Assembly: GCF_006345805.1 (NCBI RefSeq)
Contig: NW_021834602.1
Location: forward strand, 2,692 to 66,691
Direction: 5' to 3'
Length of the DNA stretch: 64,000 nucleotides
Origin: Octopus sinensis
Lineage: Eukaryota
Under the pieces are notes generated by a model. That model made no database searches. It was given only the letters and a program-made list of their open reading frames with translations, and had not been told where the DNA came from. The position numbers and the translations under genes are program-made. Below, piece after piece: positions 1-60,163 of this stretch. The number at the start of each line of letters is the position of its first letter. Within the stretch, counting starts at the first letter, position 1.

Positions 1-407
1 AGGACCATTTAAGGCGAATTCAAAATATTACATTATATAATTAGGGCTTAGTAAAATAAATTACTTTGCCACATACTGAACTTAGTAGAAATAGCAGCCA
101 AAAAAGATTTTTTTCTTAGCATTTCTACTACTTAAAGAAAATTTCTCTCAGATAATGTTTACTCTAGACAGCTCACGAAGGTTTGGGGGTAAATACAGAA
201 AAATATCACAAGTACATAGATCGTTTGAGTACGTCAACGTTTCAAGATTAGCCAAATAAAATCAGCATTCTTTCGTCAGCTCAAAATTCTAATTGGATTG
301 GAAACACTAAAAAGAAGGAACTTTACCTATCAGCGAACTTGTCGCTTCAGATGAACCAGTCCAACTAAACAGTGTCAACAAATTCAAAATGCGCAGGCGT
401 AAAATTC
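1..407 (-). mobile_element. Inverted copy of HHR element family B (runs off the window start)
   Basis: 1-407 is the reverse complement of 579-988, differing mostly by homopolymer indels. It switches to the direct copy at the shared 'aattc' (403-407). Confidence 0.8.
224..285 (-). ncRNA. Type I hammerhead ribozyme, family B (inverted copy)
   Basis: Reverse complement reads tttgag-CTGACGA-aaga...tctt-GAAA-cg(ttga)cg-TA-ctcaaa, the same as 706-767. Confidence 0.8.
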
Positions 408-1041
408 GCCTTAAATGGTCCTTTTACATACTGAACACTTGATGAAATTGATTAATTAATTAATTTTACCCTCAATTGTTGATATTATAATTCATTTCTC
501 TCGGTTATACTGCCTCGGTTCTCGCGGTTAAAATATAATGTTTGCTAGATAGACCACGTGGGTGGAATGGGGAGTGCAGAATTTTACGCCTGCGCATTTT
601 GAATTTGTTGACACTGTTTAGTTGGACTGGTTCATCTGAAGCGACAAGTTCGCTGATAGGTAAAGTTCCTTCTTTTTAGTGTTTTTCCAAATCCAAATTA
701 AGAAATTTGAGCTGACGAAAGAATGCTGATTTTATTTGGCTAATCTTGAAACGTTGACGTACTCAAACGATCTATGTACTTGTGATATTTTTCTGTATTT
801 ACCCCCAAACCTTCGTGAGCTGTCTAGAGTAAACCTTATCTGAGAGAATTTTCTTTAAGTAGTAGAAATGCTAAGAAAAATCTTTTTGGCTGGCTATTTT
901 CTACTAAGTTTCAGTATGTGGCAAAGTATTTTATTTTACTAAGCCCTAATTAATAATGTAATATTTTGAATTCGCCTTAAATGGTCCTTTTACATACTGA
1001 ACACTTGGTGAAAATGATAATAATTAATTTTACCCTCAATT

Positions 1042-1047
<6 letters not shown>
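403..1047 (+). mobile_element. Non-autonomous HHR-bearing retroelement, family B (~566-bp monomer plus ~80-bp terminal direct repeat)
   Basis: 403-485 is repeated at 969-1047. It contains an HHR at 706-767, ends in (TA)n, and shares blocks with the 600-bp array unit. Confidence 0.7.
706..767 (+). ncRNA. Type I hammerhead ribozyme, family B
   Basis: Stem I tttgag(706-711)/ctcaaa(762-767), CTGACGA 712-718, stem II aaga...tctt, GAAA 748-751, stem III cg-ttga-cg, GUA triplet 759-761. Confidence 0.82.
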
Positions 1048-3444: not shown

Positions 3445-3508
<64 letters not shown>

Positions 3509-3605
3509 ATAGATAAATGCTATCTTATAAATATATATATTATATAGAAAAAGATCTATAAATGCTACCATCTACCTACACACACACACACACACACACA
3601 CACAC
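2860..3605. repeat. (TA)n, (GATA)n and (CA)n microsatellites
   Basis: Direct inspection. Confidence 0.95.
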
Positions 3606-4109
3606 TTTCTCACATTTGTAAATAAACACCCATTCATATTTACGCACACTTATATATATTTGTTGAAGGACATATAGATATACATACATAAACGCAGTTG
3701 CCGTCCGTTTTAGCAGCAAATCAAAATGCTTTTGTCGTCTGAACCTCTCGTTGATTGGTCAGGACATATCCTCACATGAATCATTCACTTCTTCATGCTA
3801 TTTCGGTTGTCGGACATATTTTTGCAGCACGTCTATCTTCCTGAACAAACGAAACAATGTCAACAAACGAGAAATAGATTGTGGATAGTAAAATTAAAAA
3901 TGACTCCATTTTCTTGTCTTCCTACAGCGACAAATATTGTAAAAGCTACTGCAATCATATATCACCATAAATGCCATACTTTTTCTCATATATATACACT
4001 ATATATATATATATATATCTTGTGGCTTTCACGTTATTTATATTTATTATGTAAAGTTGTATTAATAGTATATATATATATAAATTATATATATATATAT
4101 ATAATTATA

Positions 4110-4150
<41 letters not shown>

Positions 4151-4152
<2 letters not shown>

Positions 4153-7100
4153 TAAGCAATAAGGGTTCAGCAACGAATTGCCTTACCACATACCGAATTT
4201 AGAAATAGCAGTCAAAGGGTTATAGCTATTTCTTCTACTAAAAAGGAGATCTCAGTAAAAACAGCAATGGAAGGCTGACACAAACAGGTAAGAGAGAATG
4301 AATTAACCGCAATCTATCAAACATTTTTAAAGTTATCCACGGACGTACGTTTCGAAATCAAGTTTTAGGAAAGCATAAGAATTAAAATATTAAATATTAA
4401 ATAATTCTATCTTACCGAAACTTCTTTTCTTCAGCGTGGAATACTATAATCATAAATGATTATATATTGAATTTTGAGATACTAGGAGGTACCAACTCAA
4501 CTCAGTATCAGAGCGAGCTAGAATCCTCAACTAGTATCACCGAATTCAAATTTGTGAATGAAACTGTGTCAACAGCCCCTTCCCACCCGCGTGTAGCCAA
4601 AACAAGATGCTGTAGTCATCTACTGAGATAAAATATGGTTATCCGTAATAATGAAGGGGATGAAATTAATTAATTTGGAATAATTATCAATTACACCAAG
4701 TAGTCTTCGGCATGTAAAAGCCTCATTTGAGGAAAATTAAGTAATACTAAGCAATAAGGGTTCAGCAACGAATTGCCTTACCACATACCGAATTTAGAAA
4801 TAGCAGTCAAAGGGTTATAGCTATTTCTTCTACTAAAAAGGGAGATCTCAGTAAAAACAGCAATTGGAAGGCTGACACAAACAGGTAAGAGAGAATGAAT
4901 TAACCGCAATCTATCAAACATTTTTAAGTTATCCACGGACGTACGTTTCGAAATCAAGTTTTAGGAAAGCATAAGAATTAAAATATTAAATATTAAATAA
5001 TTCTATCTTACCGAAACTTCTTTTCTCTTCAGCGTGGAATACTATAATCATAAATGATTATATATTGAATTTTGAGATACTAGGAGGTACCAACTCAACT
5101 CAGTATCAGAGCGAGCTAGAATCCTCAACTAGTATCACCGAATTCAAATTTGTGAATGAAACGATTGTGTCAACAGCCCCTTCCCACCCGCGTGTAGCCA
5201 AAACAAGATGCTGTAGTCATCTACTGAGATAAAATATGGTTATCCGTAATAATGAAGGGTGAAATTAATTAATTTGGAATAATTATCAATTACACCAAGT
5301 AGTCTTCGGCATGTAAAAGCCTCATTTGAGGAAAATTTAAGTAATACTAAGCAATAAGGGTTCAGCAACGAATTGCCTTACCACATACCGAATTTAGAAA
5401 TAGCAGTCAAAGGGTTATAGCTATTTCTTCTACTAAAAAGGGAGATCTCAGTAAAAACAGCAATTGGAAGGCTGACACAAACAGGTAAGAGAGAATGAAT
5501 TAACCGCAATCTATCAAACATTTTTAAAGTTATCCACGGACGTACGTTTCGAAATCAAGTTTTAGGAAAGCATAAGAATTAAAATATTAAATATTAAATA
5601 ATTCTATCTTACCGAAACTTCTTTTCTCTTCAGCGTGGAATACTATAATCATAAATGATTATATATTGAATTTTGAGATACTAGGAGGTACCAACTCAAC
5701 TCAGTATCAGAGCGAGCTAGAATCCTCAACTAGTATCACCGAATTCAAATTTGTGAATGAAACGATTGTGTCAACAGCCCCTTCCCACCCGCGTGTAGCC
5801 AAAACAAGATGCTGTAGTCATCTACTGAGATAAAATATGGTTATCCGTAATAATGAAGGGTGAAATTAATTAATTTGGAATAATTATCAATTACACCAAG
5901 TAGTCTTCGGCATGTAAAAGCCTCATTTGAGGAAAATTTAAGTAATACTAAGCAATAAGGGTTCAGCAACGAATTGCCTTACCACATACCGAATTTAGAA
6001 ATAGCAGTCAAAGGGTTATAGCTATTTCTTCTACTAAAAAGGGAGATCTCAGTAAAAACAGCAATTGGAAGGCTGACACAAACAGGTAAGAGAGAATGAA
6101 TTAACCGCAATCTATCAAACATTTTTAAAGTTATCCACGGACGTACGTTTCGAAATCAAGTTTTAGGAAAGCATAAGAATTAAAATATTAAATATTAAAT
6201 AATTCTATCTTACCGAAACTTCTTTTCTCTTCAGCGTGGAATACTATAATCATAAATGATTATATATTGAATTTTGAGATACTAGGAGGTACCAACTCAA
6301 CTCAGTATCAGAGCGAGCTAGAATCCTCACTAGTATCACCGAATTCAAATTTGTGAATGAAACGATTGTGTCAACAGCCCCTTCCCACCCGCGTGTAGCC
6401 AAAACAAGATGCTGTAGTCATCTACTGAGATAAAATATGGTTATCCGTAATAATGAAGGGTGAAATTAATTAATTTGGAATAATTATCAATTACACCAAG
6501 TAGTCTTCGGCATGTAAAAGCCTCATTTGAGGAAAATTTAAGTAATACTAAGCAATAAGGGTTCAGCAACGAATTGCCTTACCACATACCGAATTTAGAA
6601 ATAGCAGTCAAAGGGTTATAGCTATTTCTTCTACTAAAAAGGAGATCTCAGTAAAAACAGCAATTGGAAGGCTGACACAAAAGGTAAGAGAGAATGAATT
6701 AACCGCAATCTATCAAACATTTTTAAAGTTATCCACGGACGTACGTTTCGAAATCAAGTTTTAGGAAAGCATAAGAATAAAATATTAAATATTAAATAAT
6801 TCTATCTTACCGAAACTTCTTTTCTCTTCAGCGTGGAATACTATAATCATAAATGATTATATATTGAATTTTGAGATACTAGGAGGTACCAACTCAACTC
6901 AGTATCAGAGCGAGCTAGAATCCTCAACTAGTATCACCGAATTCAAATTTGTGAATGAACGATTGTGTCACAGCCCCTTCCCCCCGCGTGTAGCCAAAAC
7001 AAGATGCTGTAGTCATCTACTGAGATAAAATATGGTTATCCGTAATAATGAAGGGTGAAATTAATTAATTTGGAATAATTATCAATTACACCAAGTAGTC

Positions 7101-10100
7101 TTCGGCATGTAAAAGCCTCATTTGAGGAAAATTTAAGTAATACTAAGCAATAAGGGTTCAGCAACGAATTGCCTTACCACATACCGAATTTAGAAATAGC
7201 AGTCAAAGGGTTATAGCTATTTCTTCTACTAAAAAGGGAGATCTCAGTAAAAACAGCAATTGGAAGGCTGACACAAACAGGTAAGAGAGAATGAATTAAC
7301 CGCAATCTATCAAACATTTTTAAAGTTATCCACGGACGTACGTTTCGAAATCAAGTTTTAGGAAAGCATAAGAATTAAAATATTAAATATTAAATAATTC
7401 TATCTTACCGAAACTTCTTTTCTCTTCAGTGGAATACTATAATCATAAATGATTATATATTGAATTTTGAGATACTAGGAGGTACCAACTCAACTCAGTA
7501 TCAGAGCGAGCTAGAATCCTCAACTAGTATCACCGAATTCAAATTTGTGAATGAAACGATTGTGTCAACAGCCCCTTCCCACCCGCGTGTAGCCAAAACA
7601 AGATGCTGTAGTCATCTACTGAGATAAAATATGGTTATCCGTAATAATGAAGGGTGAAATTAATTAATTTGGAATAATTATCAATTACACCAAGTAGTCT
7701 TCGGCATGTAAAAGCCTCATTTGAGGAAAATTTAAGTAATACTAAGCAATAAGGGTTCAGCAACGAATTGCCTTACCACATACCGAATTTAGAAATAGCA
7801 GTCAAAGGGTTATAGCTATTTCTTCTACTAAAAAGGGAGATCTCAGTAAAAACAGCAATTGGAAGGCTGACACAAACAGGTAAGAGAGAATGAATTAACC
7901 GCAATCTATCAAACATTTTTAAAGTTATCCACGGACGTACGTTTCGAAATCAAGTTTTAGGAAAGCATAAGAATTAAAATATTAAATATTAAATAATTCT
8001 ATCTTACCGAAACTTCTTTCTCTTCAGCGTGGAATACTATAATCATAAATGATTATATATGAATTTTGAGATACTAGGAGGTACCAACTCAACTCAGTAT
8101 CAGAGCGAGCTAGAATCCTCAACTAGTATCACCGAATTCAAATTTGTGAATGAAACGATTGTGTCAACAGCCCCTTCCCACCCGCGTGTAGCCAAAACAA
8201 GATGCTGTAGTCATCTACTGAGATAAAATATGGTTATCCGTAATAATGAAGGGTGAAATTAATTAATTTGGAATAATTATCAATTACACCAAGTAGTCTT
8301 CGGCATGTAAAAGCCTCATTTGAGGAAAATTTAAGTAATACTAAGCAATAAGGGTTCAGCAACGAATTGCCTTACCACATACCGAATTTAGAAATAGCAG
8401 TCAAAAGGTTATAGCTATTTCTTCTACTAAAAAGGGAGATCTCAGTAAAAACAGCAATTGGAAGGCTGACACAAACAGGTAAGAGAGAATGAATTAACCG
8501 CAATCTATCAAACATTTTTAAAGTTATCCACGGACGTACGTTTCGAAATCAAGTTTTAGGAAAGCATAAGAATTAAAATATTAAATATTAAATAATTCTA
8601 TCTTACCGAAACTTCTTTTCTCTTCAGCGTGGAATACTATAATCATAAATGATTATATATTGAATTTTGAGATACTAGGAGGTACCAACTCAACTCAGTA
8701 TCAGAGCGAGCTAGAATCCTCAACTAGTATCACCGAATTCAAATTTGTGAATGAAACGATTGTGTCAACAGCCCCTTCCCACCCGCGTGTAGCCAAAACA
8801 AGATGCTGTGTAGTCATCTACTGAGATAAAATATGGTTTTCCGTAATAATGAAGTCTAATTTTCTCATTATATATGCGTGATGAAAAGTAAGTATTATTA
8901 CGTGGGAGATGTATTGTGTTGAGGGTGAAATATCCTTGTTACCACAGTTTTCGAGTTTGAATCAAGTTTTGTGTAAATATATTGAAATTTCTCTTGAATT
9001 TGATCTTCACGTTGTGTAATATGAGGGAGTATTGTTTGAGCGTGTAGTCAATGTGATTAAGTTGTGTGAATGAATGGTGTTCAACAGTGTAGAAATGTGA
9101 ATGCTAGTTAGTCATTTGGTAATAATGAAGGGTGAAATTAATTAATTGGAATAATTATCAATTACACCAAGTAGTCTTCGGCATGTAAAAGCCTCATTTG
9201 AGGAAAATTTAAGTAATACTAAGCAATAAGGGTTCAGCAACGAATTGCCTTACCACATACCGAATTTAGAAATAGCAGTCAAAGGTTATAGCTATTTCTT
9301 CTACTAAAAAGGGAGATCTCAGTAAAAACAGCAATTGGAAGGCTGACACAAACAGGTAAGAGAGAATGAATTAACCGCAATCTATCAAACATTTTTAAAG
9401 TTATCCACGGACGTACGTTTCGAAATCAAGTTTTAGGAAAGCATAAGAATTAAAATATTAAATATTAAATAATTCTATCTTACCGAAACTTCTTTCTCTT
9501 CAGCGTGGAATACTATAATCATAAATGATTATATATTGAATTTTGAGATACTAGGAGGTACCAACTCAACTCAGTATCAGAGCGAGCTAGAATCCTCAAC
9601 TAGTATCACCGAATTCAAATTTGTGAATGAAACGATTGTGTCAACAGCCCCTTCCCACCCGCGTGTAGCCAAAACAAGATGCTGTAGTCATCTACTGAGA
9701 TAAAATATGGTTATCCGTAATAATGAAGGGTGAAATTAATTAATTTGGAATAATTATCAATTACACCAAGTAGTCTTCGGCATGTAAAAGCCTCATTTGA
9801 GGAAAATTTAAGTAATACTAAGCAATAAGGGTTCAGCAACGAATTGCCTTACCACATACCGAATTTAGAAATAGCAGTCAAAGGGTTATAGCTATTTCTT
9901 CTACTAAAAAGGGAGATCTCAGTAAAAACAGCAATTGGAAGGCTGACACAACAGGTAAGAGAGATGAATTAACCGCAATCTATCAAACATTTTTAAAGTT
10001 ATCCACGGACGTACGTTTCGAAATCAAGTTTTAGGAAAGCATAAGAATTAAAATATTAAATATTAAATAATTCTATCTTACCGAAACTTCTTTTCTCTTC

Positions 10101-12804
10101 AGCGTGGAATACTATAATCATAAATGATTATATATTGAATTTTGAGATACTAGGAGGTACCAACTCAACTCAGTATCAGAGCGAGCTAGAATCCTCAACT
10201 AGTATCACCGAATTCAAATTTGTGAATGAAACGATTGTGTCAACAGCCCCTTCCCACCCGCGTGTAGCCAAAACAAGATGCTGTAGTCATCTACTGAGAT
10301 AAAATATGGTTATCCGTAATAATGAAGGGTGAAATTAATTAATTTGGAATAATTATCAATTACACCAAGTAGTCTTCGGCATGTAAAAGCCTCATTTGAG
10401 GAAAATTTAAGTAATACTAAGCAATAAGGGTTCAGCAACGAATTGCCTTACCACATACCGAATTTAGAAATAGCAGTCAAAGGGTTATAGCTATTTCTTC
10501 TACTAAAAAGGGAGATCTCAGTAAAAACAGCAATTGGAAGGCTGACACAAACAGGTAAGAGAGAATGAATTAACCGCAATCTATCAAACATTTTTAAAGT
10601 TATCCACGGACGTACGTTTCGAAATCAGTTTTAGGAAAGCATAAGAATTAAAATATTAAATATTAAATAATTCTATCTTACCGAAACTTCTTTTCTCTTC
10701 AGCGTGGAATACTATAATCATAAATGATTATATATTGAATTTTGAGATACTAGGAGGTACCAACTCAACTCAGTATCAGAGCGAGCTAGAATCCTCAACT
10801 AGTATCACCGAATTCAAATTGTGAATGAAACGATTGTGTCAACAGCCCCTTCCCACCCGCGTGTAGCCAAAACAAGATGCTGTAGTCATCTACTGAGATA
10901 AAATATGGTTATCCGTAATAATGAAGGGTGAAATTAATTAATTTGGAATAATTATCAATTACACCAAGTAGTCTTCGGCATGTAAAAGCCTCATTTGAGG
11001 AAAATTTAAGTAATACTAAGCAATAAGGTTCAGCAACGAATTGCCTTACCACATACCGAATTTAGAAATAGCAGTCAAAGGGTTATAGCTATTTCTTCTA
11101 CTAAAAAGGGAGATCTCAGTAAAAACAGCAATTGGAAGGCTGACACAAACAGGTAAGAGAGAATGAATTAACCGCAATCTATCAAACATTTTTAAAGTTA
11201 TCCACGGACGTACGTTTCGAAATCAAGTTTTAGGAAAGCATAAGAATTAAAATATTAAATATTAAATAATTCTATCTTACCGAAACTTCTTTTCTCTTCA
11301 GCGTGGAATACTATAATCATAAATGATTATATATTGAATTTTGAGATACTAGGAGGTACCAACTCAACTCAGTATCAGAGCGAGCTAGAATCCTCAACTA
11401 GTATCACCGAATTCAAATTTGTGAATGAAACGATTGTGTCAACAGCCCCTTCCCACCGCGTGTAGCCAAAACAAGATGCTGTAGTCATCTACTGAGATAA
11501 AATATGGTTATCCGTAATAATGAAGGGTGAAATTAATTAATTTGGAATAATTATCAATTACACCAAGTAGTCTTCGGCATGTAAAAGCCTCATTGAGGAA
11601 AATTTAAGTAATACTAAGCAATAAGGGTTCAGCAACGAATTGCCTTACCACATACCGAATTTAGAAATAGCAGTCAAAGGGTTATAGCTATTTCTTCTAC
11701 TAAAAAGGGAGATCTCAGTAAAAACAGCAATTGGAAGGCTGACACAAACAGGTAAGAGAGAATGAATTAACCGCAATCTATCAAACATTTTTAAAGTTAT
11801 CCACGGACGTACGTTTCGAAATCAAGTTTTAGGAAAGCATAAGAATTAAAATATTAAATATTAATAATTCTATCTTACCGAAACTTCTTTTCTCTTCAGC
11901 GTGGAATACTATAATCATAAATGATTATATATTGAATTTTGAGATACTAGGAGGTACCAACTCAACTCAGTATCAGAGCGAGCTAGAATCCTCAACTAGT
12001 ATCACCGAATTCAAATTTTTGATTGAATGAAACGATTGTGTCAACAGCCCCTTCCCACCCGCGTGTAGCCAAAACAAGATGCTGTAGTCATCTACTGAGA
12101 TAAAATATGGTTATCCGTAATAATGAAGGGTGAAATTAATTAATTTGGAATAATTATCAATTACACCAAGTAGTCTTCGGCATGTAAAAGCCTCATTTGA
12201 GGAAAATTTAAGTAATACTAAGCAATAAGGGTTCAGCAACGAATTGCCTTACACCACATACCGAATTTAGAAATAGCAGTCAAAGGGTTATAGCTATTTC
12301 TTCTACTAAAAAGGGAGATCTCAGTAAAAACAGCAATTGGAAGACTGACACAAACAGGTAAGAGAGAATGAATTAACCGCAATCTATCAAACATTTTTAA
12401 AGTTATCCACGGACGTACGTTTCGAAATCAAGTTTTAGGAAAGCATAAGAATTAAAATATTAAATATTAAATAATTCTATCTTACCGAAACTTCTTTTCT
12501 CTTCAGCGTGGAATACTATAATCATAAATGATTATATATTGAATTTTGAGATACTAGGAGGTACCAACTCAACTCAGTATCAGAGCGAGCTAGAATCCTC
12601 AACTAGTATCACCGAATTCAAATTTGTGAATGAAACGATTGTGTCAACAGCCCCTTCCCACCCGCGTGTAGCCAAAACAAGATGCTGTAGTCATCTACTG
12701 AGATAAAATATGGTTATCCGTAATAATGAAGGGTGAAATTAATTAATTTGGAATAATTATCAATTACACCAAGTAGTCTTCGGCATGTAAAAGCCTCATT
12801 TGAG
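4151..12804 (-). repeat. Tandem array of 14 ~600-bp HHR-containing units (retrozyme-like, family A)
   Basis: Unit starts (actaagcaataaggg) at 4151, 4746, 5346, 5947, 6547, 7142, 7741, 8340, 9218, 9817, 10416, 11015, 11613 and 12217. Units are near-identical, and the array is flanked by (TA)n on the left and atatat on the right. Confidence 0.95.
4932..5038 (-). ncRNA. Type I hammerhead ribozyme, family A (representative; one per array unit)
   Basis: Minus strand: tccacg-CTGAAGA-gaaa...(76-nt stem II)...tttc-GAAA-c(gtac)g-TC-cgtgga. Predicted cuts lie between plus positions 4341/2, 4937/8, 5538/9, 6139/40, 6737/8, 7334/5, 7933/4, 8532/3, 9409/10, 10007/8, 10608/9, 11206/7, 11805/6 and 12411/2. 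Units 1 and 6 have 2-bp deletions next to the core. Confidence 0.85.
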
Positions 12805-13486
12805 ATATATACCCTTCTCTTCCATATAAATACATTCGAATGCTTATGGATATTTTGATACACTCACACACAGAAGCGCAGAAACGCACGTACGCATATA
12901 TAAAAGCGTATTTACATAGCTCAGAATATAGATGCATTTACACAAACAGTATGAAACAGCTCCGTATCTACTTAAGTGTATTGCTTGCTTTTCTACATAT
13001 GCCGATTTAGCAAGCCTCAGATTTATGGGAGAAAGGGAAAATGAACAGGAGCAATATTTAAGACTTTCCATAAGATTTTATTAGATTACTGGATGTAGTG
13101 CTATCTCGTGATCGAAATTGTCAGCCCATTCCATCCGCCAAGATTTTAGCCAGATGGCATCGTATCTTCCAATGCGATCATACATCTCGTCAAACACACA
13201 ATCACTCAGTTGGTTATGTTACAAAAGTATTGAAGTTAAGGGTGCAGACGTGGAAGTGCGGTTAAGAAACTCAATTTGGAACCGAGTTGTTTCAGGTTCA
13301 GTCTCAGTACGTGGTAACTTAGGCAAGTGTTTTTGTTTTTACTTTAGTTCTGAGCCGGAAGCTATGTGGACCCCGGCCGTGTGTGTGTGTGTCTGTGTGT
13401 GGAGGGGGTGATGCGGACCATACCGGACTGACTTGATGCCTCAAATTTAGTACCTAATTCAACTGAATCTTAATTATTTATATATA

Positions 13487-14530
13487 CACAGGGATTGGAC
13501 AGAATAATGGAAACACCTCGAAATTTCAAACAAATTTATTTTAATACGGGGTAAGACCGCCTTTGGCAGTAATTACAGCTTGAATTCTACGAGGTATGGA
13601 CTCGTACAAAATTTTGGATTATTTTCAAAGGAATTGTTGTCCATTCTTCAACTAAAACAGTCTCCAGTTCTTGTGGTGATGACGGTGGAAGATACCGTCT
13701 TCTTGCTTGTTTTTCTAAAATGCACCATAAATATTCAATAATATTGAGATCTGGGGACTGCAGTGGCTAGATAAGTTGTTCAACTTCACTAGAATGTTCC
13801 TCGTGCCATTCACTAACAACTTTAGCTGTGTGAATTGGTGCATTATCATTCTGAAAGATTGCGTTTCCCTGCGGAAACAGTTTTGCAACCATGGGATGAA
13901 TTTGATCAGATAAAATGCTTAAATAGTTTCGACTATTAATTCTGCCATGAAGGGAAACCATTGGGTCGGCGGATTTCCAAGATATAGCCCCAAGATCATC
14001 ACTTGTGTACTCAGCCGGTGGTCGAAATGAGGTAAAGGATGACTCGTCCCAAAAAATAACATTCTTCCTCTGCTCTAGAGTTCAATTCTGTAGGTTTTTA
14101 CTCCACTCTAAATGCTTTGCAACGTATGTTTTTGAAAGTAGTGGTTTTCTGATTGCAGTTCTGTGAAACCCGGCTTTATGCAGCACCCGGCGAACAGTTT
14201 TTGTGGAAACTGGGTCCTCGATGTGGTCATTAAGCTCTGCAATAATTTTGGAAGTTGTACTTTTGTGATCTTTTCTAACAATTCGCGTAAGTGTCCGACG
14301 GTCCCTATCTGAAAGTTTTAGTTTTCTTCCGGAGTTTTGTTTAGATGAGGAGGTTTTTCCCTCTTTCTCAAATGCTATCATTACTTTCGAAGCAGTACTT
14401 CTTGATACACCAAACTTTTCGGCTGGTTTCATTACGCTAGCACCTGCCATACGAGCACCAACAATTCGACCTCTTTGAAAGTCCGATAGATCTGTCATTT
14501 TAAAGAATTTTAATTACCTTTTTCTGGTGA
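13487..14530 (-). mobile_element. Tc1-family DNA transposon remnant (frameshifted transposase)
   Basis: ORF 14082-14498 has a paired-like HTH (MTDLSDFQRGRIVGARMAG...GRK). Downstream there are DES, FQNDNAPIH and SPDLNIIE motifs. One TIR-like end at 13487. Confidence 0.9.
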
Positions 14531-17929: not shown

Positions 17930-18625
17930 AAAGAGAGAAACATTTGAAAGTTGAGAAAGTTGCTAATGACTTGAACTGCAATATTCGGACAATTGAAAGG
18001 ATGAAGGAACGATACAATGCCACAAACAGCACGGATGATCGTCCACACAGTAGCCGACTTAGGGTTACAACGACACGTCAAGATCGTTCTATCATATTGT
18101 ATTTCTGTGGTAGATGGTAGAGCTAAGGTTTGGAGAAAGATGGATGAACGTCATGCCGATGGCTGTGTGGTGGAGAGAGACTCATAGGGAGGACAGAGCA
18201 TCATGGTATGGAGCAGGATTGCACTCAACCAGAAAGTTGGACCGGTGGTCTTCCAAATCAACGGCAAAGGCCGGGGCAATGGAGTAACCGCTGCTCGCTA
18301 CATCGACCAAGTCTTGAGGCCTCACTTTGTGCCATACCTTGTCCATGGTCGGATTCACGTGTTCCAACATGACAATGCCCGTGCCCACACTGCCAGGTTA
18401 AGAACAAACTTTCCAACAGCACAACATCCAGACACTGCCATGTCCTGCCCTAAGTCCGGACTGGAACCCCGTAGACCACCTGTGGGACGAAATCCAAAGA
18501 AGGCTAAATGACATCTATCCAAGGCCGACAACTGCGGTACAACTCACTGCAACTTCCAACTGTGTGGGCTGCTATCCCCATGGCCTTCATCAATCGTTTA
18601 GTGCATTCAATGTACAGAAGATGCC
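17930..18625 (+). mobile_element. Second Tc1-family transposase remnant
   Basis: Fragments VANDLNCNIRTIERM...RPHS, IMVWSRI, FQHDNARAHTAR and SPDWNPVDHLWDEI. Confidence 0.85.
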
Positions 18626-27733: not shown

Positions 27734-27832
<99 letters not shown>

Positions 27833-28056
27833 TATATACGAATATAACAAGAAGGGTAGTAAATTATTTACTACCAGGTGCCCAGCACACAAAAGACGAA
27901 TAGTCATAAGACAAAAATATTATTCATATAGAAAAATATTATTCATGTAGTTATACATTAAGGGCTCCTAAATAAAGATGCCGAGTGCGGGGAACACAAA
28001 AAGGGGATGAATTTATCGAGAGTGAAAATCAAAAACGTTTACCGATAACTTTAACA

Positions 28057-28130
28057 ACTCGTACCGCGGTTTCTGCTTCTTTCTAGCAAAACACAGAATA
28101 TGTTTGCTAAGGCCAGCTTCATCAGCGAGT
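28057..28130 (-). ncRNA. Type I hammerhead ribozyme, family C (copy 1)
   Basis: actcg-CTGATGA-agct...(tagcaaa/tttgcta hairpin)...agca-GAAA-c(cgcg)g-TA-cgagt. There is an A.A mismatch at 10.1/11.1. Confidence 0.72.
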
Positions 28131-28502
28131 CGCCTGAATTTATCGAGGTCTGCAGCGATGTGGGACTATATGTTACACCCGACTACTAGCAGATCTTAAC
28201 TTTTCAAATCTCTGGCGCAGACGCAAAATTTACACGGGCATGCCGGGAAGAATTTTACGATATAAATTCATCATGTAGTATGCGAATATAAACAAGAAGG
28301 GTAGTAATATTATTTACTACCAGGTGCCCAGCACAAAAGACGAATTAGTCATAAGACAAAAATATTATTCATATAGAAAAATATTATTCATGTAGTTATA
28401 CAATTAAGGGCTCCTAAATAAAGATGCCGAGTGCTGGGAACACAAAAAGGGGATGAATTTATCGAGAGTGAAAATCAAAAACGTTTACCGATAACTTTAA
28501 CA

Positions 28503-28576
28503 ACTCGTACCGCGGTTTCTGCTTCTTTCTAGCAAAACACAGAATATGTTTGCTAAGGCCAGCTTCATCAGCGAGT
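28503..28576 (-). ncRNA. Type I hammerhead ribozyme, family C (copy 2)
   Basis: Same motif as copy 1. Confidence 0.72.
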
Positions 28577-29552
28577 CGCCTGAATTTAATCGAGGTCTGC
28601 AGCGATGTGGGACTATATGTTACACCCGACTACTAGCAGATCTTAAATTTTCATCCCCTTTTTGTGTTCCCAGCACTCGGCATCTTTATTTAGGAGCCCT
28701 TAATTGTATAACTATATATATATATTAGGAGTGTGGGGTTGAGTGGGTTTTTGGAGTATGTTGAGGTTATATGTATGTATAGGTATGTGTAAGTGGGGTG
28801 TGTATTTGTATATGTCGTGGGTGTGTGGTTTAGTGTGGTATTTGTGTGTGAATGTTTAGGTTGGGGGATTGCTATATAGGTATGTTATAGAGTTTAGTAA
28901 AGGGAGATTTTATCATTATATGTTTTTATGAGTTTTGGTTATCATGGTAGTTTTGTTAAGGAATTCGTAGTAATTTGTGTCTATTTGCGATGTCTGTTGT
29001 TTTATTGCATATTTCATTCATAATTTTTAAGTAGTTTCGTTTTACCAAGTGAATATAATTTTTAATTCCATTTATTCCATTTCTCCGTTCATAATTTTAA
29101 GTGATGTCCGTTTTAGAGCGGTAATGTGGGTTGTATGTGTGTGTGAGGGAGTATGATAAGTATTGTGTTGAAGTATTTAGCTATTTTATTTATTCATCGT
29201 TGCTAGACGTTTTTATGTGTATGTATAGGGATTATATATAGGTGTGTGATTTAGTGTATGTATTTAGATATGGTTATATATAATTAGTTATATGTGTATG
29301 GGTGTATATATAGTTTATTTTTGTTTTGTTTTATATTTTTTATTTTATATTTTATATTTTATATTTTATATTTTTATATTATATTTAATTGTTGATAGGT
29401 TTATTTTAGTTTATATATTGTTTATATATTGATATATATGGATTATATATAGGTTATAATAGATTATATATTTATATTTTTTCATTAATACTTTAATTAT
29501 TTTAAAATTATTATTTTTATATTTTAAAATATTGATATTTTAGATTGGAAGT

Positions 29553-29594
29553 CCACCTGAAGATTGTCGATCAAGACAAGAAACATTGTAGTGG
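29553..29594 (+). ncRNA. Compact type I hammerhead ribozyme, family D
   Basis: ccac-CTGAAGA-ttgtc(gatcaa)gacaa-GAAA-c(att)g-TA-gtgg. Confidence 0.65.
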
Positions 29595-29761
29595 CGGTTT
29601 TTTTTGACTTTTTATTAAAATTTATGTATTGATTAAGTTTCCTTGTTGTTTTGCAAAATAGTGGTTTTGTCTCTAATAATATTATATAATATTTTACTAT
29701 AAAATGGATTTAATCCTAAATCTGATTTTTTTCCTGTACATTGGATTTATTCCCTAATATT

Positions 29762-34618: not shown

Positions 34619-35175
34619 TAGGCGCAGGAGTGGCTGTGTGGATTTGGTAGACGGAAACTGAAAGAAGCCTGTCGTATATATGTATGTATATATATGTGTG
34701 TGTGTGTATGTTTGTGTGTCTGTGTTTCTCCCCCTAGCATTGCTTGACAACCGATGCTGGTGTGTTTACGTCCCCGTCACTTAGAGGTTCGGCAAAAGAG
34801 ACCGATAGAATAAGTACTAGGCTTACAAAGAATAAGTCCTGGGGTCGATTTGCTCGACTAAAGGCGGTGCTCCAGCATGGCCGCAGTCAAATGACTGAAA
34901 CAAGTAAAAGAGAGAGTAAAAAGAGAGTAATGTATGTATGCATGTATGTATGTATGTTTGTGTGTCTGTGTTTGTCCCCGCAACATCGCTTGACAACCGA
35001 TGCTGGTGTGTATAAGTCCCCGTAATTTAGCGGTTCGGCAAAAGAGACCGATTGAATAAGTACTAGGCTTACAAAGAATAAGTCCTTCGGTCGATTTGCT
35101 CGGTTAAAGGCGGTGCTCCAGCATGGCCGCAGTTAAATGACTGAAACGAGTAAAAGAGAGAGAGCAAAGAGAGTA
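34619..35175 (+). mobile_element. SINE family A with head deletion and duplicated 3' half
   Basis: The body and tail occur twice (34705-34925 and 34955-35175). Confidence 0.8.
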
Positions 35176-44324: not shown

Positions 44325-45470
44325 GGATGCTAAAATTTGTTGAAAAATATGAAAGACCGAAAAGGGTGCTAAAAGTTGTTGAAAAACATGAAAGACCGAA
44401 AAAACTTCACTCTATTCTGAAAGAGAGCAAAAAATTCGCTTCTGATCTCTTAGATGCCTACCAGATTGATCAGGTTGAAGGAAATGCGCCAACTGCTGCT
44501 GCAAAGAAAATAAAATTAATTGCAAAGACAAAAGCACATGAAAAATTAGCTAGCAGATGGGAACAAAACCTCTCCATGGCAAGTATGTGGCCCGTAGCAA
44601 ACAAGCTGATGTCGACCAGAAACACACGCACCAATGTTTATGAAGCTCAGGGCTAAAAGCAGAGAATGAAAGTTTCATATTTGCTGCCCAAGGCCAAAGC
44701 TTATTAACCCGGAACTACCAAGCCAATTTGTTAAAAAATGGAGCTGACCCAAAATGCCGTTTCTGTAACGATGAGATTGGAACTATAGACCACCTAATCT
44801 CAGGATGTAGAGTCTTAGCACCTGTAGAATATAAAGCAAGACAAGACAGAGTCGACCAGTATTTACACTGGACAATATGTCGGCATTATAAAATCAAAAC
44901 CGCTGACAAATGGTATAAACACCATCCTGAAGCTGTGATTGAGGGAGAAAATGTATCGATTCTCTGGGACTTCCCCGTACATACCGACAAAACTATAAAA
45001 GCTAATAAACCGGATATTATTATAAAAAATCAGACAAAAAAAGGTGTCTTTATTAATTGATATGAGTATTCCTTGCGATCACAATATAGCGGCGAAAGAA
45101 ATATAAAGACTTGCTAATAGAAATTGAAAATATGTGACATCTGAAGGCGACTACAGTACCAGTGATTGTAGGATCTCTAGGAATGATAAAAAAAAGGTAC
45201 TGAAATCTATTTGAAAATGATACCAGGCTTACCATCCCTACAGGAAGTGCAAAAAATCGTGTTAACTGAAACGGCTCATGTACTGAGAAGAGCATTATCG
45301 CTGTGAAAACAACATCCATTCAGGAATTTATTCATTTATTTTTTTAAATACATATTTTACCTGTGAATTTGCATGTGTAATCTGGGAATGCGTACAATGA
45401 GCTTCTCTGCCCTAGGTGTATGGAAAACACTCGGCGAGAAATGGAAGAAAATTTGAAGAAGGAAAAATAA
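44325..45470 (+). mobile_element. R4/Dong-like RLE non-LTR retrotransposon, 5'-truncated
   Basis: CCHC motif (CRFC...DHLISGC), then ILWDF...KANKPDIII...LIDMSIP (PD-D/ExK restriction-like endonuclease) and PVIVGSLG. Stop at 45304-45306. (TAA)n on both sides. Confidence 0.85.
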
Positions 45471-51992: not shown

Positions 51993-52237
51993 CATACATA
52001 TAAGATGCTAGAATAGATCCGTTATGGTCTTACCACTAAGAGAGGAATGTTCTCAAGAAAACTTAGTAAACGCCAGAACGTAAGCGAGCAAGGTAAATGA
52101 AAAGAAACATCCTTCTTATATGTATGTAATATGATTTTTCTGAATCTTCAGATTTTAATATGCTAGACCACTAGTTTTAAATTGATATTAATCAGATTAG
52201 TATTTGAAATTTATATTTATATATATATATATATATA

Positions 52238-52614
52238 GTTATCCGTATAATGAAAGGGTGAAATTAATTAATTTGGAAAAATTATCAATTACACAAGTAG
52301 TCTTCGGCATGTAAAAGCCTCATTCGAGGAAAATTTAAGTAATACTAAGCAATAAGGGTTTAGCAACGAGTTGCCTTACACATACCGAATTTAGAAATAG
52401 CAGTCAAAGGGTTATAGCTATTTCTTCTACTAAAAAGGGAGATCTCAGTAAAAACAGCATTTGGAAGGCTCTCTCTTACTGTTTGTGTCTGCCTTCCAAA
52501 TGCTGTTTTACTGAGATCTCCCTTTTTAGTAGAAGAAAATAGCTATAACCCTTTGACTGCTATTTCTAAATTCGGTATGTGGTAAGGCACTCGTTGCTAA
52601 CCCTTATTGCTTAG

Positions 52615-52615
<1 letters not shown>
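52238..52615. mobile_element. Fold-back fragment of the 600-bp family A unit (no HHR)
   Basis: 52238-52469 matches the array unit across its junction, and 52470-52615 is the inverted copy. (TA)n on both sides. Confidence 0.9.
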
Positions 52616-52647
<32 letters not shown>

Positions 52648-59360: not shown

Positions 59361-59749
59361 AACCGCTGGTCTTGTGCCAAAAATGTGAAACTAATATTTC
59401 AGGTGAAAAATAAGTACCAGTTGAGTACTGGTGTCCATATAATAGATTTAACCCTTTCCCTGAAATTGCTTGTTAACCCTCTTCCCGAAATTGTTGGTAA
59501 CCCTTTCCTCGAAATTGCTAGCCTTCTACCAAATTCCAAACCAATATTTCAGGCATCGGCTTTATTGTAACGCTCCCTGTTACGTGAGACCCTTCTCAGT
59601 CCGGACGAAGAAATCTGAAGGCCACATGATAGAATCAAGAAGGAAGAGACCGATTACTGTCACCCATATATATGATATTGATAACCCTCAGCCGTTTTTA
59701 AGTAATATTTACGACATCAAGAGACACAGCTGGTCACAGTATTCTTATT

Positions 59750-60163
59750 TCTTTATTACCCGCAATGAGCTAAACACAGAGAGGACAAACAAGGACAGAC
59801 AAAACGGATTAAGTCGATTACATCGACCCCAGTGCGTAACTGGTACTTAATTTATCGACCGCGAAAAGATGAAAGGCAAAGTCGACCTCGGCAGAATTTG
59901 AACTCAGAACGTAACGGCAGACGAAATACCTATTTCTTTATTGCCCACAAGGGGCTAAACACAGAGAGGACAAACAAGGATAGACAAACGGATTAAGTCG
60001 ATTATATCGACCCCAGTGCGTAACTGGTACTTAATTTATCGACCCCGAAAGGATGAAAGGCAAAGTCGACCTCGGCGGAATTTGAACTCAGAAAGTAACG
60101 GCAGACGAAATACCGCTAAGCATTTCGTCCGGCGTGCTAACGTTTCTGCCAGCTCGCCGCCTT
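59750..60163 (-). mobile_element. SINE family B, partial dimer
   Basis: Same junction as at 48803, here at ~59930. Confidence 0.85.

What the first reader, a model, noticed from the sequence alone, without database searches (positions are those of the whole stretch)
4151..12804. The 600-bp 'satellite' is an array of 14 hammerhead ribozyme units (retrozyme-like)
Seen: each unit's minus strand reads tccacg-CUGAAGA-[stem II]-GAAA-C-GUAC-G-UC^cgugga, a complete type I core with a 6-bp stem I and a GUC cleavage triplet. Established: tandem type I HHR repeats (metazoan retrozymes, and pLTRs of Penelope-like elements) self-cleave multimeric transcripts into monomers that can circularise. Inference: a minus-strand transcript would give ~600-nt monomers or circRNAs, larger than the few-hundred-nt animal retrozymes I know of. 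I do not know of a description in this lineage.
Basis: partly seen in the sequence, partly recalled or inferred. Interest (0 to 1): 0.92.

Follow-up and report, generated by a model that had tools for sequence, protein, structure and literature searches.

The report
Hammerhead-ribozyme tandem repeat (animal retrozyme)
The 600-bp "satellite" is a tandem array of a non-coding mobile element whose every unit carries a self-cleaving hammerhead ribozyme motif; this is a known kind of element (an animal "retrozyme"), here as new families in what is probably an octopus genome, with clear insertion footprints.

Summary
Window 4152-12804 is a tandem array of a ~601-bp unit that is >99% identical between copies. 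Each of the 14 copies carries on the minus strand UCCACG-CUGAAGA-[83-nt helix II]-GAAA-C-GUAC-G-UC^CGUGGA. Twelve copies have an intact core and two have 2-nt deletions.

An explicit type-I hammerhead descriptor gave 0 hits in 300 dinucleotide shuffles of the window. The same scan, plus inspection, found three more hammerhead-bearing repeats:
- family B (1-1045), a ~55-65% identical homologue of A
- family C (27835-28726), a 446-bp tandem
- a marginal single motif D (29553-29594)

Between the homologous families A and B, every core nucleotide is kept. Four of 6 helix-I pairs and 2 of 4 basal helix-II pairs changed by double compensatory substitutions.

All six observable 3' junctions abut (TA)n. 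Two independent family-A insertions share one terminus. Inverted 5'-truncated copies sit head-to-head. This is the Penelope-like-element insertion signature.

Rfam covariance models detect none of the motifs, and cleavage is untested. The unit size lies inside the published range (51-972 bp).

Verdict: new families of a known kind, the metazoan non-LTR retrozymes. Interest is moderate.

The parts
4152..12804 (-). Family A retrozyme-like tandem array: 14 hammerhead-bearing units of ~601 nt. In the sense (minus) direction it starts at consensus position 209 and ends at consensus position 195.
   Evidence: Units are >99% identical (4 substitutions; the rest are 1-2-nt indels, all but one private to a single unit). 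GC is 34%. No ORF exceeds 59 aa.
4932..5038 (-). Representative family A hammerhead (107 nt): helix I UCCACG/CGUGGA, core CUGAAGA, 83-nt helix II closed by G10.1-C11.1, GAA, then helix III A-U, C-G with the palindromic loop GUAC, then C17. Cleavage lies between 4938 and 4937.
   Evidence: MFE -19.9 kcal/mol with helices I and II formed and the core open. Intact copies, given as [C17-6, C3+6]: 12406-12512, 11800-11905, 11201-11307, 10603-10708, 10002-10108, 9404-9509, 8527-8633, 7928-8033, 6732-6837, 6134-6240, 5533-5639, 4932-5038.
7329..7433 (-). Defective hammerhead copy: CCACG-CUGAAG has become CCAC-UGAAG (G2.1 and C3 lost).
4336..4440 (-). Defective hammerhead copy: a 2-nt deletion at the A9/G10.1 boundary (CTGAAGAGAAAAG has become CTGAAGAAAAG).
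8855..9130 (-). Secondary insertion inside one unit: 264 bp plus a duplicated 12-bp target site (CTTCATTATTAC). It is single-copy in the window and post-dates the array.
4069..4151 (.). (TA)n tract abutting the 3' (sense) end of the array: ...GCTTAGTAT|ATATAT.
52238..52470 (-). Second family A locus, inverted part (consensus 300 to 66). Its 3' end runs into (TA)n at 52215-52237.
   Evidence: 96% identity to the consensus
52470..52616 (+). Second family A locus, direct part (consensus 45 to 195), head-to-head with the inverted part. It ends ...GCTTAGTAT|(AT)n, the identical terminus to the main array.
   Evidence: 95% identity
403..1045 (+). Family B element, direct copy: 1.13 units of ~565 nt. 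It is homologous to A and ends ...CAATTGTGAT|(AT)n. The first 5 nt (403-407, AATTC) are shared with the inverted copy, so the 5' end lies somewhere in 403-408.
1..407 (-). Family B inverted, 5'-truncated copy, head-to-head with the direct copy. It runs off the window start.
   Evidence: 95% identity to the direct copy
706..767 (+). Family B hammerhead: UUUGAG-CUGACGA-AAGA..UCUU-GAA-ACG-UUGA-CGU-A^CUCAAA.
224..285 (-). Family B hammerhead in the inverted copy; sequence identical to the direct copy's.
27835..28653 (-). Family C: 1.8 tandem units of ~446 bp (97% identical). The 3' (sense) end abuts (AT)n 27737-27838.
28502..28577 (-). Family C hammerhead: GACUCG-CUGAUGA-[45-nt helix II with an A.A mismatch at its base]-GAA-A-CCGCGG-U-A^CGAGUU. 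Helix III is a single base pair with a palindromic loop. The second copy is at 28056-28131.
28650..28726 (+). Family C inverted 77-bp fragment at the upstream end; it abuts a (TA)7 tract.
29553..29594 (+). Marginal candidate D, a compact minimal hammerhead: CCAC-CUGAAGA-UUGUC-GAUCAA-GACAA-GAA-AC-AUU-GU-A^GUGG.
   Evidence: The relaxed descriptor expects 0.025 hits per window. Single copy, helix I only 4 bp.

Best explanation
The array is a family of metazoan non-LTR retrozymes: non-coding, non-autonomous retroelements related to the pseudo-LTRs of Penelope-like elements (PLEs).

Proposed cycle:
1. The minus strand is transcribed as a longer-than-unit RNA.
2. Each unit folds a type-I hammerhead. 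Because helix III is only 2 bp with the palindromic loop GUAC, two neighbouring motifs most likely pair into a double hammerhead and cut after GUC. This releases ~601-nt monomers with 5'-OH and 2',3'-cyclic phosphate ends.
3. A host tRNA ligase can close these into a compact circular RNA.
4. New genomic copies are made in trans by a PLE reverse transcriptase / GIY-YIG endonuclease that nicks (TA)n tracts. It primes cDNA synthesis on AU-rich patches of the RNA, giving tandem, partly tandem and inverted 5'-truncated insertions.

Shown here: the motif, its statistics, covariation, the fold predictions, the non-coding nature of the unit and the insertion footprints.

Inferred only: transcription, cleavage, circularisation, the identity of the mobilising enzyme, and whether the 14 units arose in one reverse-transcription event or by later unequal crossing-over.
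For: (1) Complete hammerhead core in 12 of 14 units: C3-A9, G10.1-C11.1, G12-A14, A15.1-U16.1, C17, and a 6-bp open helix I.

(2) There were 0 descriptor hits in 300 shuffles of 64 kb.

(3) Family B is homologous to A and collinear with it from the cleavage site. It keeps all 11 fixed core nucleotides and differs only at the free positions N7 and H17. It changes 4 of 6 helix-I pairs and 2 of 4 basal helix-II pairs on both sides without breaking any. Over the four motifs, 93% of cells are paired, 10 of 11 pairs show double changes, and 0 of 500 shuffles reach this.

(4) An unrelated tandem family C carries the classical 1-bp helix III with a palindromic loop.

(5) MFE folds recover helices I and II with the core open. 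Co-folds predict double hammerheads: -57.2 vs 2 x -22.4 kcal/mol for A, and -31.2 vs 2 x -10.1 for B.

(6) The 601-nt monomer folded as a circle gives -160.4 kcal/mol against -118.6 +/- 5.9 for shuffles (z = -7.0). The antisense strand gives z = -3.1.

(7) No ORF in the unit exceeds 59 aa, GC is 34%, and there is no tRNA-like part.

(8) All six observable 3' junctions abut (TA)n, although perfect (TA)>=6 covers only 3.7% of the window. Two independent family-A insertions end at the same nucleotide, consensus 195. Inverted 5'-truncated copies lie head-to-head in A-52k, B and C.

(9) (TA)n bias and tandem/inverted insertions are published PLE traits (PMC8557442). Retrozymes are proposed to be PLE-dependent.

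(10) The array meets the published operational criteria for an 'active' non-LTR retrozyme.
Against: - Rfam 15 hammerhead covariance models give no match to any of the four motifs, at gathering thresholds or at E<=10 in short sub-windows.
- Helix II of family A is 83 nt long, so the canonical loop1-loop2 tertiary contact cannot be assumed.
- Families B, C and D lack the usual G10.1-C11.1 pair.
- The fold z-scores of the isolated motifs are weak (-1.3 to -1.6 for A, -0.2 for B).
- No RT or GIY-YIG ORF was found in the window, though only ORFs >=130 aa were examined.
- The array's 5' end is not at the cleavage site. The template of this insertion was therefore either uncleaved, or circular, or the array grew at the DNA level.
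- No expression or cleavage data are available, and no copies outside the window could be retrieved.
- The pair counts are inflated, because three of the four motifs were selected by a pairing descriptor. Only the A-to-B comparison is unbiased.
Confidence: 0.8

Rival explanations
1. An ordinary satellite derived from a retrozyme or PLE pseudo-LTR. A single short insertion (consensus 209 to 195) was amplified to 14 units at the DNA level by unequal crossing-over or replication slippage. The hammerhead is carried along as a relic with no present role.
For: Unequal crossing-over preserves the phase of the array ends, so the termini do not tell the models apart. The published model of satellite birth from PLE ends is exactly this. 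Two of the 14 cores are damaged.
Against: Twelve of 14 cores are intact, and the family has at least one further dispersed insertion with the same terminus. The hammerhead is kept with compensatory changes between families A and B, which points to selection on the fold during family divergence. Nearly all variants are private to one unit, with no higher-order pattern.
Confidence: 0.2
2. The whole 14-unit array was made in a single event by rolling-circle reverse transcription of a 601-nt circular RNA, primed at consensus 195 from a (TA)n nick. This is a sub-variant of the best explanation that commits on how the array arose.
For: Units are >99% identical and variants are almost all singletons, a star-like pattern. 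The 3' terminus is defined and shared with an independent locus. The 14 uncleaved hammerheads are easier to explain with a compactly folded circle than with a linear 8.4-kb transcript. The rolling-circle model is proposed in the literature.
Against: The 5' ends of the A array (consensus 209) and of the B direct copy fall within <=7 nt of homologous positions. That suggests a defined RNA 5' end, for example a transcription start, which a circle does not have. The singleton variants are mostly homopolymer indels that may be sequencing errors.
Confidence: 0.3
3. The repeats are pseudo-LTRs of an autonomous Penelope-like element whose ORF has been lost locally, not a separate non-autonomous family.
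For: The insertion architecture matches PLEs: partial tandems, inverted 5'-truncated copies and (TA)n targets. Retrozymes and pLTRs are phylogenetically interleaved in Xenopus.
Against: Three independent loci of A and B contain no ORF between repeats. No RT or GIY-YIG was found among ORFs >=130 aa in 64 kb. Fourteen head-to-tail units without internal sequence fit the retrozyme pattern, not a PLE.
Confidence: 0.1
4. The hammerhead-like motif is a chance match in a satellite, or the copy number is an assembly artefact.
For: Rfam gives no hit. The near-identical units with homopolymer indels are typical of long-read assemblies, where array length can be wrong.
Against: There were 0 of 300 shuffles with any hit. 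Three further independent motifs occur in the same window. There is covariation between homologous families. An assembly error could alter the number of units but not the motif.
Confidence: 0.03

Closest known systems
Metazoan non-LTR retrozymes (Cervera & de la Pena 2020, PMC7229834; Li, Clavereau & Pollet 2026 preprint, 10.64898/2026.07.22.740005)
   Same: AT-rich, non-coding tandem repeats, each unit with a type-I hammerhead. The monomer RNA is highly self-paired. Arrays range from dimers to tens of units. The element is proposed to depend on PLEs. The unit length of 601 nt lies inside the reported 51-972 bp range.
   Different: Helix II is unusually long (83 nt in A, 45 nt in C), so the canonical loop1-loop2 contact is not evident. 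The families are not described for cephalopods in the searchable literature. The consistent (TA)n junctions and the shared termini seen here are not mentioned in the passages I read (no occurrence of 'microsatellite').
Newt/axolotl satellite-2 hammerheads (HHR_Amex1/2)
   Same: Helix III is very short (1-2 bp) and capped by a palindromic tetraloop. These ribozymes cleave poorly as monomers and well as dimers. Families A (2 bp + GUAC) and C (1 bp + CCGCGG) have the same design, and co-folding predicts the double hammerhead.
   Different: The amphibian units are 330-350 bp with a short helix II and conserved loop-loop contacts. There is no sequence similarity.
Minimal hammerheads in the pseudo-LTRs of Penelope-like elements (Cervera & de la Pena 2014) and PLE insertion structure (Craig et al. 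2021, PMC8557442)
   Same: Type-I motifs with a weak helix III. Partial tandems, an inverted 5'-truncated copy next to the upstream repeat, and a bias for microsatellites, (TA)n in Naiads.
   Different: No RT/GIY-YIG ORF lies between the repeats here. Naiads, the PLE clade reported in Octopus spp., are said to lack canonical hammerheads, so the mobilising partner is unknown.
Plant LTR retrozymes
   Same: Non-autonomous retroelements whose hammerheads excise a 600-1000-nt RNA that circularises.
   Different: Plant elements have type-III hammerheads inside LTRs, PBS and PPT, 4-bp TSDs, GC >55% and dependence on Ty3-gypsy. None of that applies here.

Membership tests
Hammerhead ribozyme, type I | Conserved catalytic core C3-U4-G5-A6-N7-G8-A9, G12-A13-A14, A15.1-U16.1, and H17 (not G) at the cleavage site | tested here: met
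   CUGAAGA ... GAA-A ... U-C in 12 of 14 units of A. The same holds in B (CUGACGA, A17), C (CUGAUGA, A17) and D.
Hammerhead ribozyme, type I | Three helices around the core, with helix I open (5' and 3' ends in helix I) | tested here: met
   6-bp helix I, hairpin helix II and hairpin helix III. MFE and centroid folds form helices I and II and leave the core unpaired. The 2-bp helix III costs only +1.1 kcal/mol when enforced.
Hammerhead ribozyme, type I | Helices supported by compensatory changes among related sequences | tested here: met
   A vs its homologue B: 4 of 6 helix-I pairs and 2 of 4 basal helix-II pairs changed on both sides, none broken. Caveat: there are few sequences, and three of the four were chosen by a pairing descriptor.
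Hammerhead ribozyme, type I | G10.1-C11.1 closing helix II | tested here: met
   Met in family A. Not met in B (A-U), C (A.A) or D (U-A).
Hammerhead ribozyme, type I | Match to the curated Rfam hammerhead covariance models | tested here: not met
   No hammerhead hit at gathering score on the whole window, nor at E<=10 on 3500-14000, 150-850 or 27950-29650. The field detects these variants with descriptors (RNAmotif, rnabob), not with Rfam models.
Hammerhead ribozyme, type I | Tertiary contact between the helix I loop/bulge and loop 2 | tested here: inconclusive
   Helix I (6 bp, then a 2x2 internal loop) and helix II (4 bp, then an AG/GA internal loop) have the usual spacing. No known contact motif could be checked. 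Mussel retrozyme hammerheads also lack the archetypal contacts.
Hammerhead ribozyme, type I | Site-specific self-cleavage | not testable with these tools
   Needs in vitro transcription.
Metazoan non-LTR retrozyme | Tandem repeat with at least two consecutive units carrying a complete type-I hammerhead whose MFE is below -5 kcal/mol (operational definition) | tested here: met
   Runs of 8 and 4 consecutive intact units. MFE is -19.9 kcal/mol. My descriptor is not the authors' rnabob file.
Metazoan non-LTR retrozyme | Low GC, no coding capacity, no LTR/PBS/PPT | tested here: met
   GC 34%. The longest ORF in the unit is 59 aa. No tRNA-related sequence. The structure is head-to-tail units only. 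PPT was not searched specifically.
Metazoan non-LTR retrozyme | Unit length within the reported range | tested here: met
   601 nt against 150-450 bp and 51-972 bp.
Metazoan non-LTR retrozyme | Monomer RNA highly self-paired | tested here: met
   Circular MFE z = -7.0 for the sense strand, with 64% of bases paired.
Metazoan non-LTR retrozyme | Expressed as linear and circular monomer RNA | not testable with these tools
   No transcriptome access.
Metazoan non-LTR retrozyme | Dispersed copies (mobility) and co-occurrence with PLEs | tested here: inconclusive
   A second family-A locus 40 kb away has the same terminus, and families B and C are separate insertions. No PLE ORF was seen in the window. 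Naiad PLEs are reported in Octopus spp.. The genome-wide picture is unavailable.
Autonomous Penelope-like element | ORF with RT and GIY-YIG endonuclease between pseudo-LTRs | tested here: not met
   No such ORF within or beside the repeats.
Plant LTR retrozyme | Type-III hammerheads within LTRs, with PBS and PPT | tested here: not met
   The topology is type I (helix I open), and there are 14 head-to-tail units without LTR structure.

The most novel reading that the evidence does not exclude
The junctions in this window may be direct genomic footprints of how animal retrozymes integrate. Integration would be target-primed reverse transcription from nicks in (TA)n, primed by microhomology on AU-rich patches of the RNA. 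This yields a family-specific 3' terminus (consensus 195, found twice). The 5' terminus falls within <=7 nt of homologous positions in families A and B (about consensus 209) and does not coincide with the ribozyme cleavage site.

That would mean the copied template is an uncleaved longer-than-unit transcript starting at an internal promoter, or a circle with a fixed stop, rather than the cleaved monomer. It would also suggest that the partner is a (TA)n-targeting PLE, such as the hammerhead-less Naiads known from octopus. In that case the ribozyme-bearing elements would parasitise a PLE clade that has no ribozyme of its own.
Probability: 0.3. Interest if true: 0.6.

Novelty: new member of a known kind. 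Interest (0 to 1): 0.42.

Why it matters
Retrozymes are a recently recognised class of ribozyme-bearing mobile elements that give abundant small circular RNAs in animals. How they are copied and which enzyme copies them is still open; the authors of the 2026 preprint say so explicitly.

This window adds three or four new families, probably the first noted in a cephalopod. One has an unusually long helix II. More usefully, the window offers several independent insertions with clean junctions. These show (TA)n targeting, shared termini and inverted 5'-truncated copies.

Those footprints tie retrozymes to PLE-type integration at the sequence level. They also give concrete, testable predictions: a transcription start near consensus 209, a priming site at 195, and a double-hammerhead requirement. 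None of this overturns current views.

Tried and rejected
- Rfam scans: gathering thresholds on the whole window, and E<=10 on three sub-windows. No hammerhead hit. The only weak hits were chance-level sRNA/snoRNA matches.
- TRF does not report the array; no ~600-bp period appears among its 143 rows, and its longest period in this run was 500.
- Exact-pattern scans of metagenome and viral contig collections with the 22-nt 3' half of the ribozyme: 0 hits. These collections hold little or no animal DNA.
- Exact-ORF look-ups, to fetch other genomic copies or the species: not on record.
- Literature search for three SINE-like sequence strings: 0 papers (one search was a format error).
- Pfam scan on eight ORFs >=130 aa: only a Tc1-type HTH.
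- ARAGORN: no tRNA-like parts.
- Lineage from TE proteins. The Tc1 fragment gives Oratosquilla at 71-73% and Octopus sinensis at 69%. The LINE C-terminus has Octopus sinensis as its only named hit, at 69%. This is consistent with an octopod but not decisive.
- A SINE-type (Sm-alpha-like) origin was considered and rejected: the units are head-to-tail, with no tRNA-like head and no A-tail.
- A plant-type LTR retrozyme was rejected on ribozyme topology.

Full report
**1. Observation**

The repeat finder shows 13-14 copies with start-to-start spacing of 595-607 bp across 4152-12804. TRF does not report it: no ~600-bp period appears among its rows, and its longest period in this run was 500.

Cutting the minus strand at every GAACGUACGUC-type site gives 13 complete monomers of 596-606 nt. 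One monomer of 877 nt holds a later insertion. The 601-nt consensus differs from the individual units at only 4 substitutions and about 30 one- or two-base indels. Nearly all of these are private to a single unit, and many lie in homopolymers. The units are therefore effectively identical, and the array alone carries no covariation signal.

The minus strand of each unit reads UCCACG-CUGAAGA-(83 nt)-GAAA-C-GUAC-G-UC^CGUGGA. C17 lies at 12412, 11806, 11207, 10609, 10008, 9410, 8533, 7934, 7335, 6738, 6140, 5539, 4938 and 4342. Two copies, at 7335 and 4342, have 2-nt deletions touching the core.

**2. Is it more than chance?**

I wrote an explicit type-I descriptor with these requirements:
- helix I of at least 5 bp
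- CUGANGA
- helix II of at least 4 bp, up to 110 nt long
- GAA
- A15.1-U16.1
- helix III of at least 2 bp
- H17

It hits 12 of the 14 units. It gave no hit in 300 dinucleotide-preserving shuffles of the full 64 kb on both strands.

Rfam 15 reports no hammerhead, at gathering thresholds or at E<=10. This is a real negative for membership by that criterion. However, the groups that work on these elements detect them with RNAmotif or rnabob descriptors, not with Rfam models. The 83-nt helix II and the 2-bp helix III are far from the Rfam seed geometry (this last point rests on my own knowledge).

**3. Independent support from the rest of the window**

The same scan found an identical pair of different motifs, at 706-767 (+) and 224-285 (-): UUUGAG-CUGACGA-AAGA...UCUU-GAA-ACG-UUGA-CGU-A^CUCAAA. 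They belong to a ~565-nt element, family B. It is present as a direct 1.13-mer at about 403-1045 and as a head-to-head inverted, 5'-truncated copy at 1-407.

B is homologous to A. Local blocks are 65% identical and the global alignment is 53% identical. The two are collinear when both are rotated to the cleavage site. This makes A against B a fair covariation test:
- All eleven fixed core nucleotides are retained.
- The only core differences are at N7 (A vs C) and H17 (C vs A), the two positions that are free in hammerheads.
- Four of six helix-I pairs changed on both sides (C-G to A-U, A-U to G-C, and C-G to U-A twice).
- Two of the four basal helix-II pairs changed on both sides.
- No pair was broken.

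By inspection, a ~446-bp tandem repeat at 27835-28653 carries on its minus strand GACUCG-CUGAUGA-(45 nt)-GAA-A-CCGCGG-U-A^CGAGUU. This family C has the single-pair helix III with a palindromic loop that is described for amphibian and PLE hammerheads.

A relaxed descriptor adds a marginal 42-nt candidate D at 29553-29594, where 0.025 hits per window are expected.

On a trimmed alignment of the four motifs, 93% of cells pair and 10 of 11 pairs show double changes. None of 500 shuffles reach this, and sliding the partners by 1-3 columns drops pairing to 28-47%. Three of the four motifs were chosen by a pairing rule, so I give weight mainly to the A-B comparison.

**4. Folding**

- The 107-121-nt family-A motif folds with helices I and II formed and the core open.
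- Enforcing the 2-bp helix III costs 1.1 kcal/mol.
- Z-scores of the isolated motifs are weak: -1.3 to -1.6 for A and -0.2 for B.
- Co-folding two copies predicts the domain-swapped double hammerhead, with an 8-bp (A) or 10-bp (B) intermolecular helix III. The energies are -57.2 against 2 x -22.4 kcal/mol for A, and -31.2 against 2 x -10.1 for B. This matches the published behaviour of short-helix-III hammerheads, which cleave well only as dimers.
- Folded as a circle, the 601-nt sense monomer reaches -160.4 kcal/mol against -118.6 +/- 5.9 for shuffles (z = -7.0). The antisense strand gives z = -3.1 and family B gives z = -3.5. Helices I and II persist in that fold.

**5. What kind of element is it?**

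- The unit has no ORF above 59 aa.
- GC is 34%.
- It has no tRNA-like part and no LTR structure.
- It satisfies the operational definition of an active non-LTR retrozyme: a tandem repeat with at least two consecutive complete type-I hammerheads and MFE below -5 kcal/mol.
- Its length is inside the reported range of 51-972 bp. The average is 650 bp in ray-finned fishes.

**6. Insertion footprints**

- In sense orientation the main array begins ...GGGTATATAT|CTCAAATGAGG (consensus 209). It ends ...GCTTAGTAT|(AT)n (consensus 195). That is 14 units minus 13 nt.
- A second family-A locus at 52238-52616 is 95-96% identical to the consensus. It is a head-to-head pair: an inverted part (consensus 300 to 66) and a direct part (45 to 195). 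Both outer ends lie in (TA)n, and the direct part ends at exactly the same nucleotide as the main array.
- Family B ends ...CAATTGTGAT|(AT)n. Family C ends ...TATATTCG|(TA)n, and its 77-bp inverted fragment abuts another (TA)7.
- So all six observable 3' junctions abut (TA)n, while perfect (TA)>=6 tracts cover 3.7% of the window.
- Each junction falls on an AU-rich patch of the element (UAU|UA, GAU|AUUAU, AAC|CAUAU). I read this as microhomology priming; that is an inference.
- Partial tandems, an inverted 5'-truncated copy at the upstream side and a (TA)n bias are published hallmarks of PLE integration, the (TA)n bias being the one reported for Naiads.
- Retrozymes are proposed to be PLE-dependent derivatives of pseudo-LTRs.
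- No RT or GIY-YIG ORF was seen among ORFs >=130 aa in the window, so any partner acts in trans.

**7. Open mechanistic point**

The 5' end of the A array (consensus 209) and the 5' end of the B direct copy (plus 403-408) fall within 7 nt or less of homologous positions. By rough estimate that is a coincidence of about 2-3% for a 600-nt unit. Neither end is at the cleavage site. This hints at a defined RNA 5' end, such as an internal transcription start, and therefore at an uncleaved longer-than-unit template.

Against that, the 14 near-identical units with singleton variants fit a one-step rolling-circle copy of a circle. Later unequal crossing-over would also preserve the end phases. The data here cannot separate these three routes.

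**8. Lineage and prior description**

Two TE-protein searches both return Octopus sinensis among the few named hits, at 69% identity. One of them also returns the mantis shrimp Oratosquilla at 71-73%. The SINE-like repeats at 34620-35170 match what I remember of abundant octopus SINEs; this is memory only and is not tool-verified. An octopod source is likely but not proven.

In the searchable literature, no paper links hammerheads or retrozymes to cephalopods. The one exception is the Naiad PLE study, which lists Octopus spp. and notes that Naiads lack canonical hammerheads. Retrozymes are already documented in molluscs (mussel) and many other invertebrate phyla.

**9. Verdict**

This is a new family, or rather several families, of a known kind. 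Its useful features are a long helix II and unusually informative junctions. Cleavage, transcription and circularisation remain to be shown.

Noticed in passing
window 1-1045: A second hammerhead-bearing element, family B (~565 nt), 53-65% identical to the satellite unit. It is present as a direct 1.13-mer plus a head-to-head inverted 5'-truncated copy, and ends in (AT)n at 1045-1111.
   Followed up: yes
window 27835-28726: A third, unrelated hammerhead tandem, family C (~446-bp unit, 1.8 copies, plus an inverted 77-bp fragment). It has CUGAUGA, a 1-bp helix III and the palindromic loop CCGCGG. My first descriptor missed it because of an A.A mismatch at the base of helix II.
   Followed up: yes
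window 29553-29594 (+): A compact 42-nt minimal hammerhead-like motif (candidate D). It is single-copy, has a helix I of only 4 bp, and lies ~300 bp from family C in an AT-rich minisatellite region.
   Followed up: partly
window 52238-52616: A dispersed older copy of the satellite family (95-96% identical) as an inverted/direct head-to-head pair inside a (TA)n tract. It lacks the ribozyme part and shares the main array's exact 3' terminus.
   Followed up: yes
window 12804 and 403-408: The 5' ends of the family A array and of the family B direct copy map to homologous positions within <=7 nt (about consensus 209), not to the ribozyme cleavage site. This may be a transcription start or a fixed RT stop.
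   Followed up: partly
window 8855-9130: A 264-bp A/C-rich insertion with a 12-bp target-site duplication (CTTCATTATTAC) inside one satellite unit. There is no other copy in the window and its identity is unknown.
   Followed up: partly
family A consensus ~335-370 / window 540-580: A G-rich box conserved between families A and B (ACGCGGGTGGGAAGGGG vs ACGTGGGTGGAATGGGG), along with other short conserved blocks (CTTTTACAT, GTATGTGG, TAATTAATTAATTT-ACCCT). Their function is unknown; they might be recognition elements.
   Followed up: no
window 14082-14498 (-) and 18203-18511 (+): Tc1/mariner transposase fragments: an HTH_Tnp_Tc3_2 domain, and a DDE-region ORF with ...HVFQHDNARAHTA.... The best named relatives of the first are in Oratosquilla oratoria and Octopus sinensis.
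   Followed up: partly
window 44327-45060 (+): Two adjacent ORFs that look like the C-terminal zinc-knuckle part of a LINE-type retrotransposon protein. The only named relative is from Octopus sinensis (69%).
   Followed up: partly
window 34620-35170 and 59746-60114: SINE-like interspersed repeats, each present as a tandem pair (246-bp and 184-bp periods). The first matches my memory of octopus SINEs, but no tool or paper confirmation was obtained.
   Followed up: partly
whole window: Very high microsatellite density: 143 TRF rows and 108 perfect (TA)>=6 tracts in 64 kb. The (TA)n tracts appear to serve as landing sites for the ribozyme-bearing elements.
   Followed up: partly
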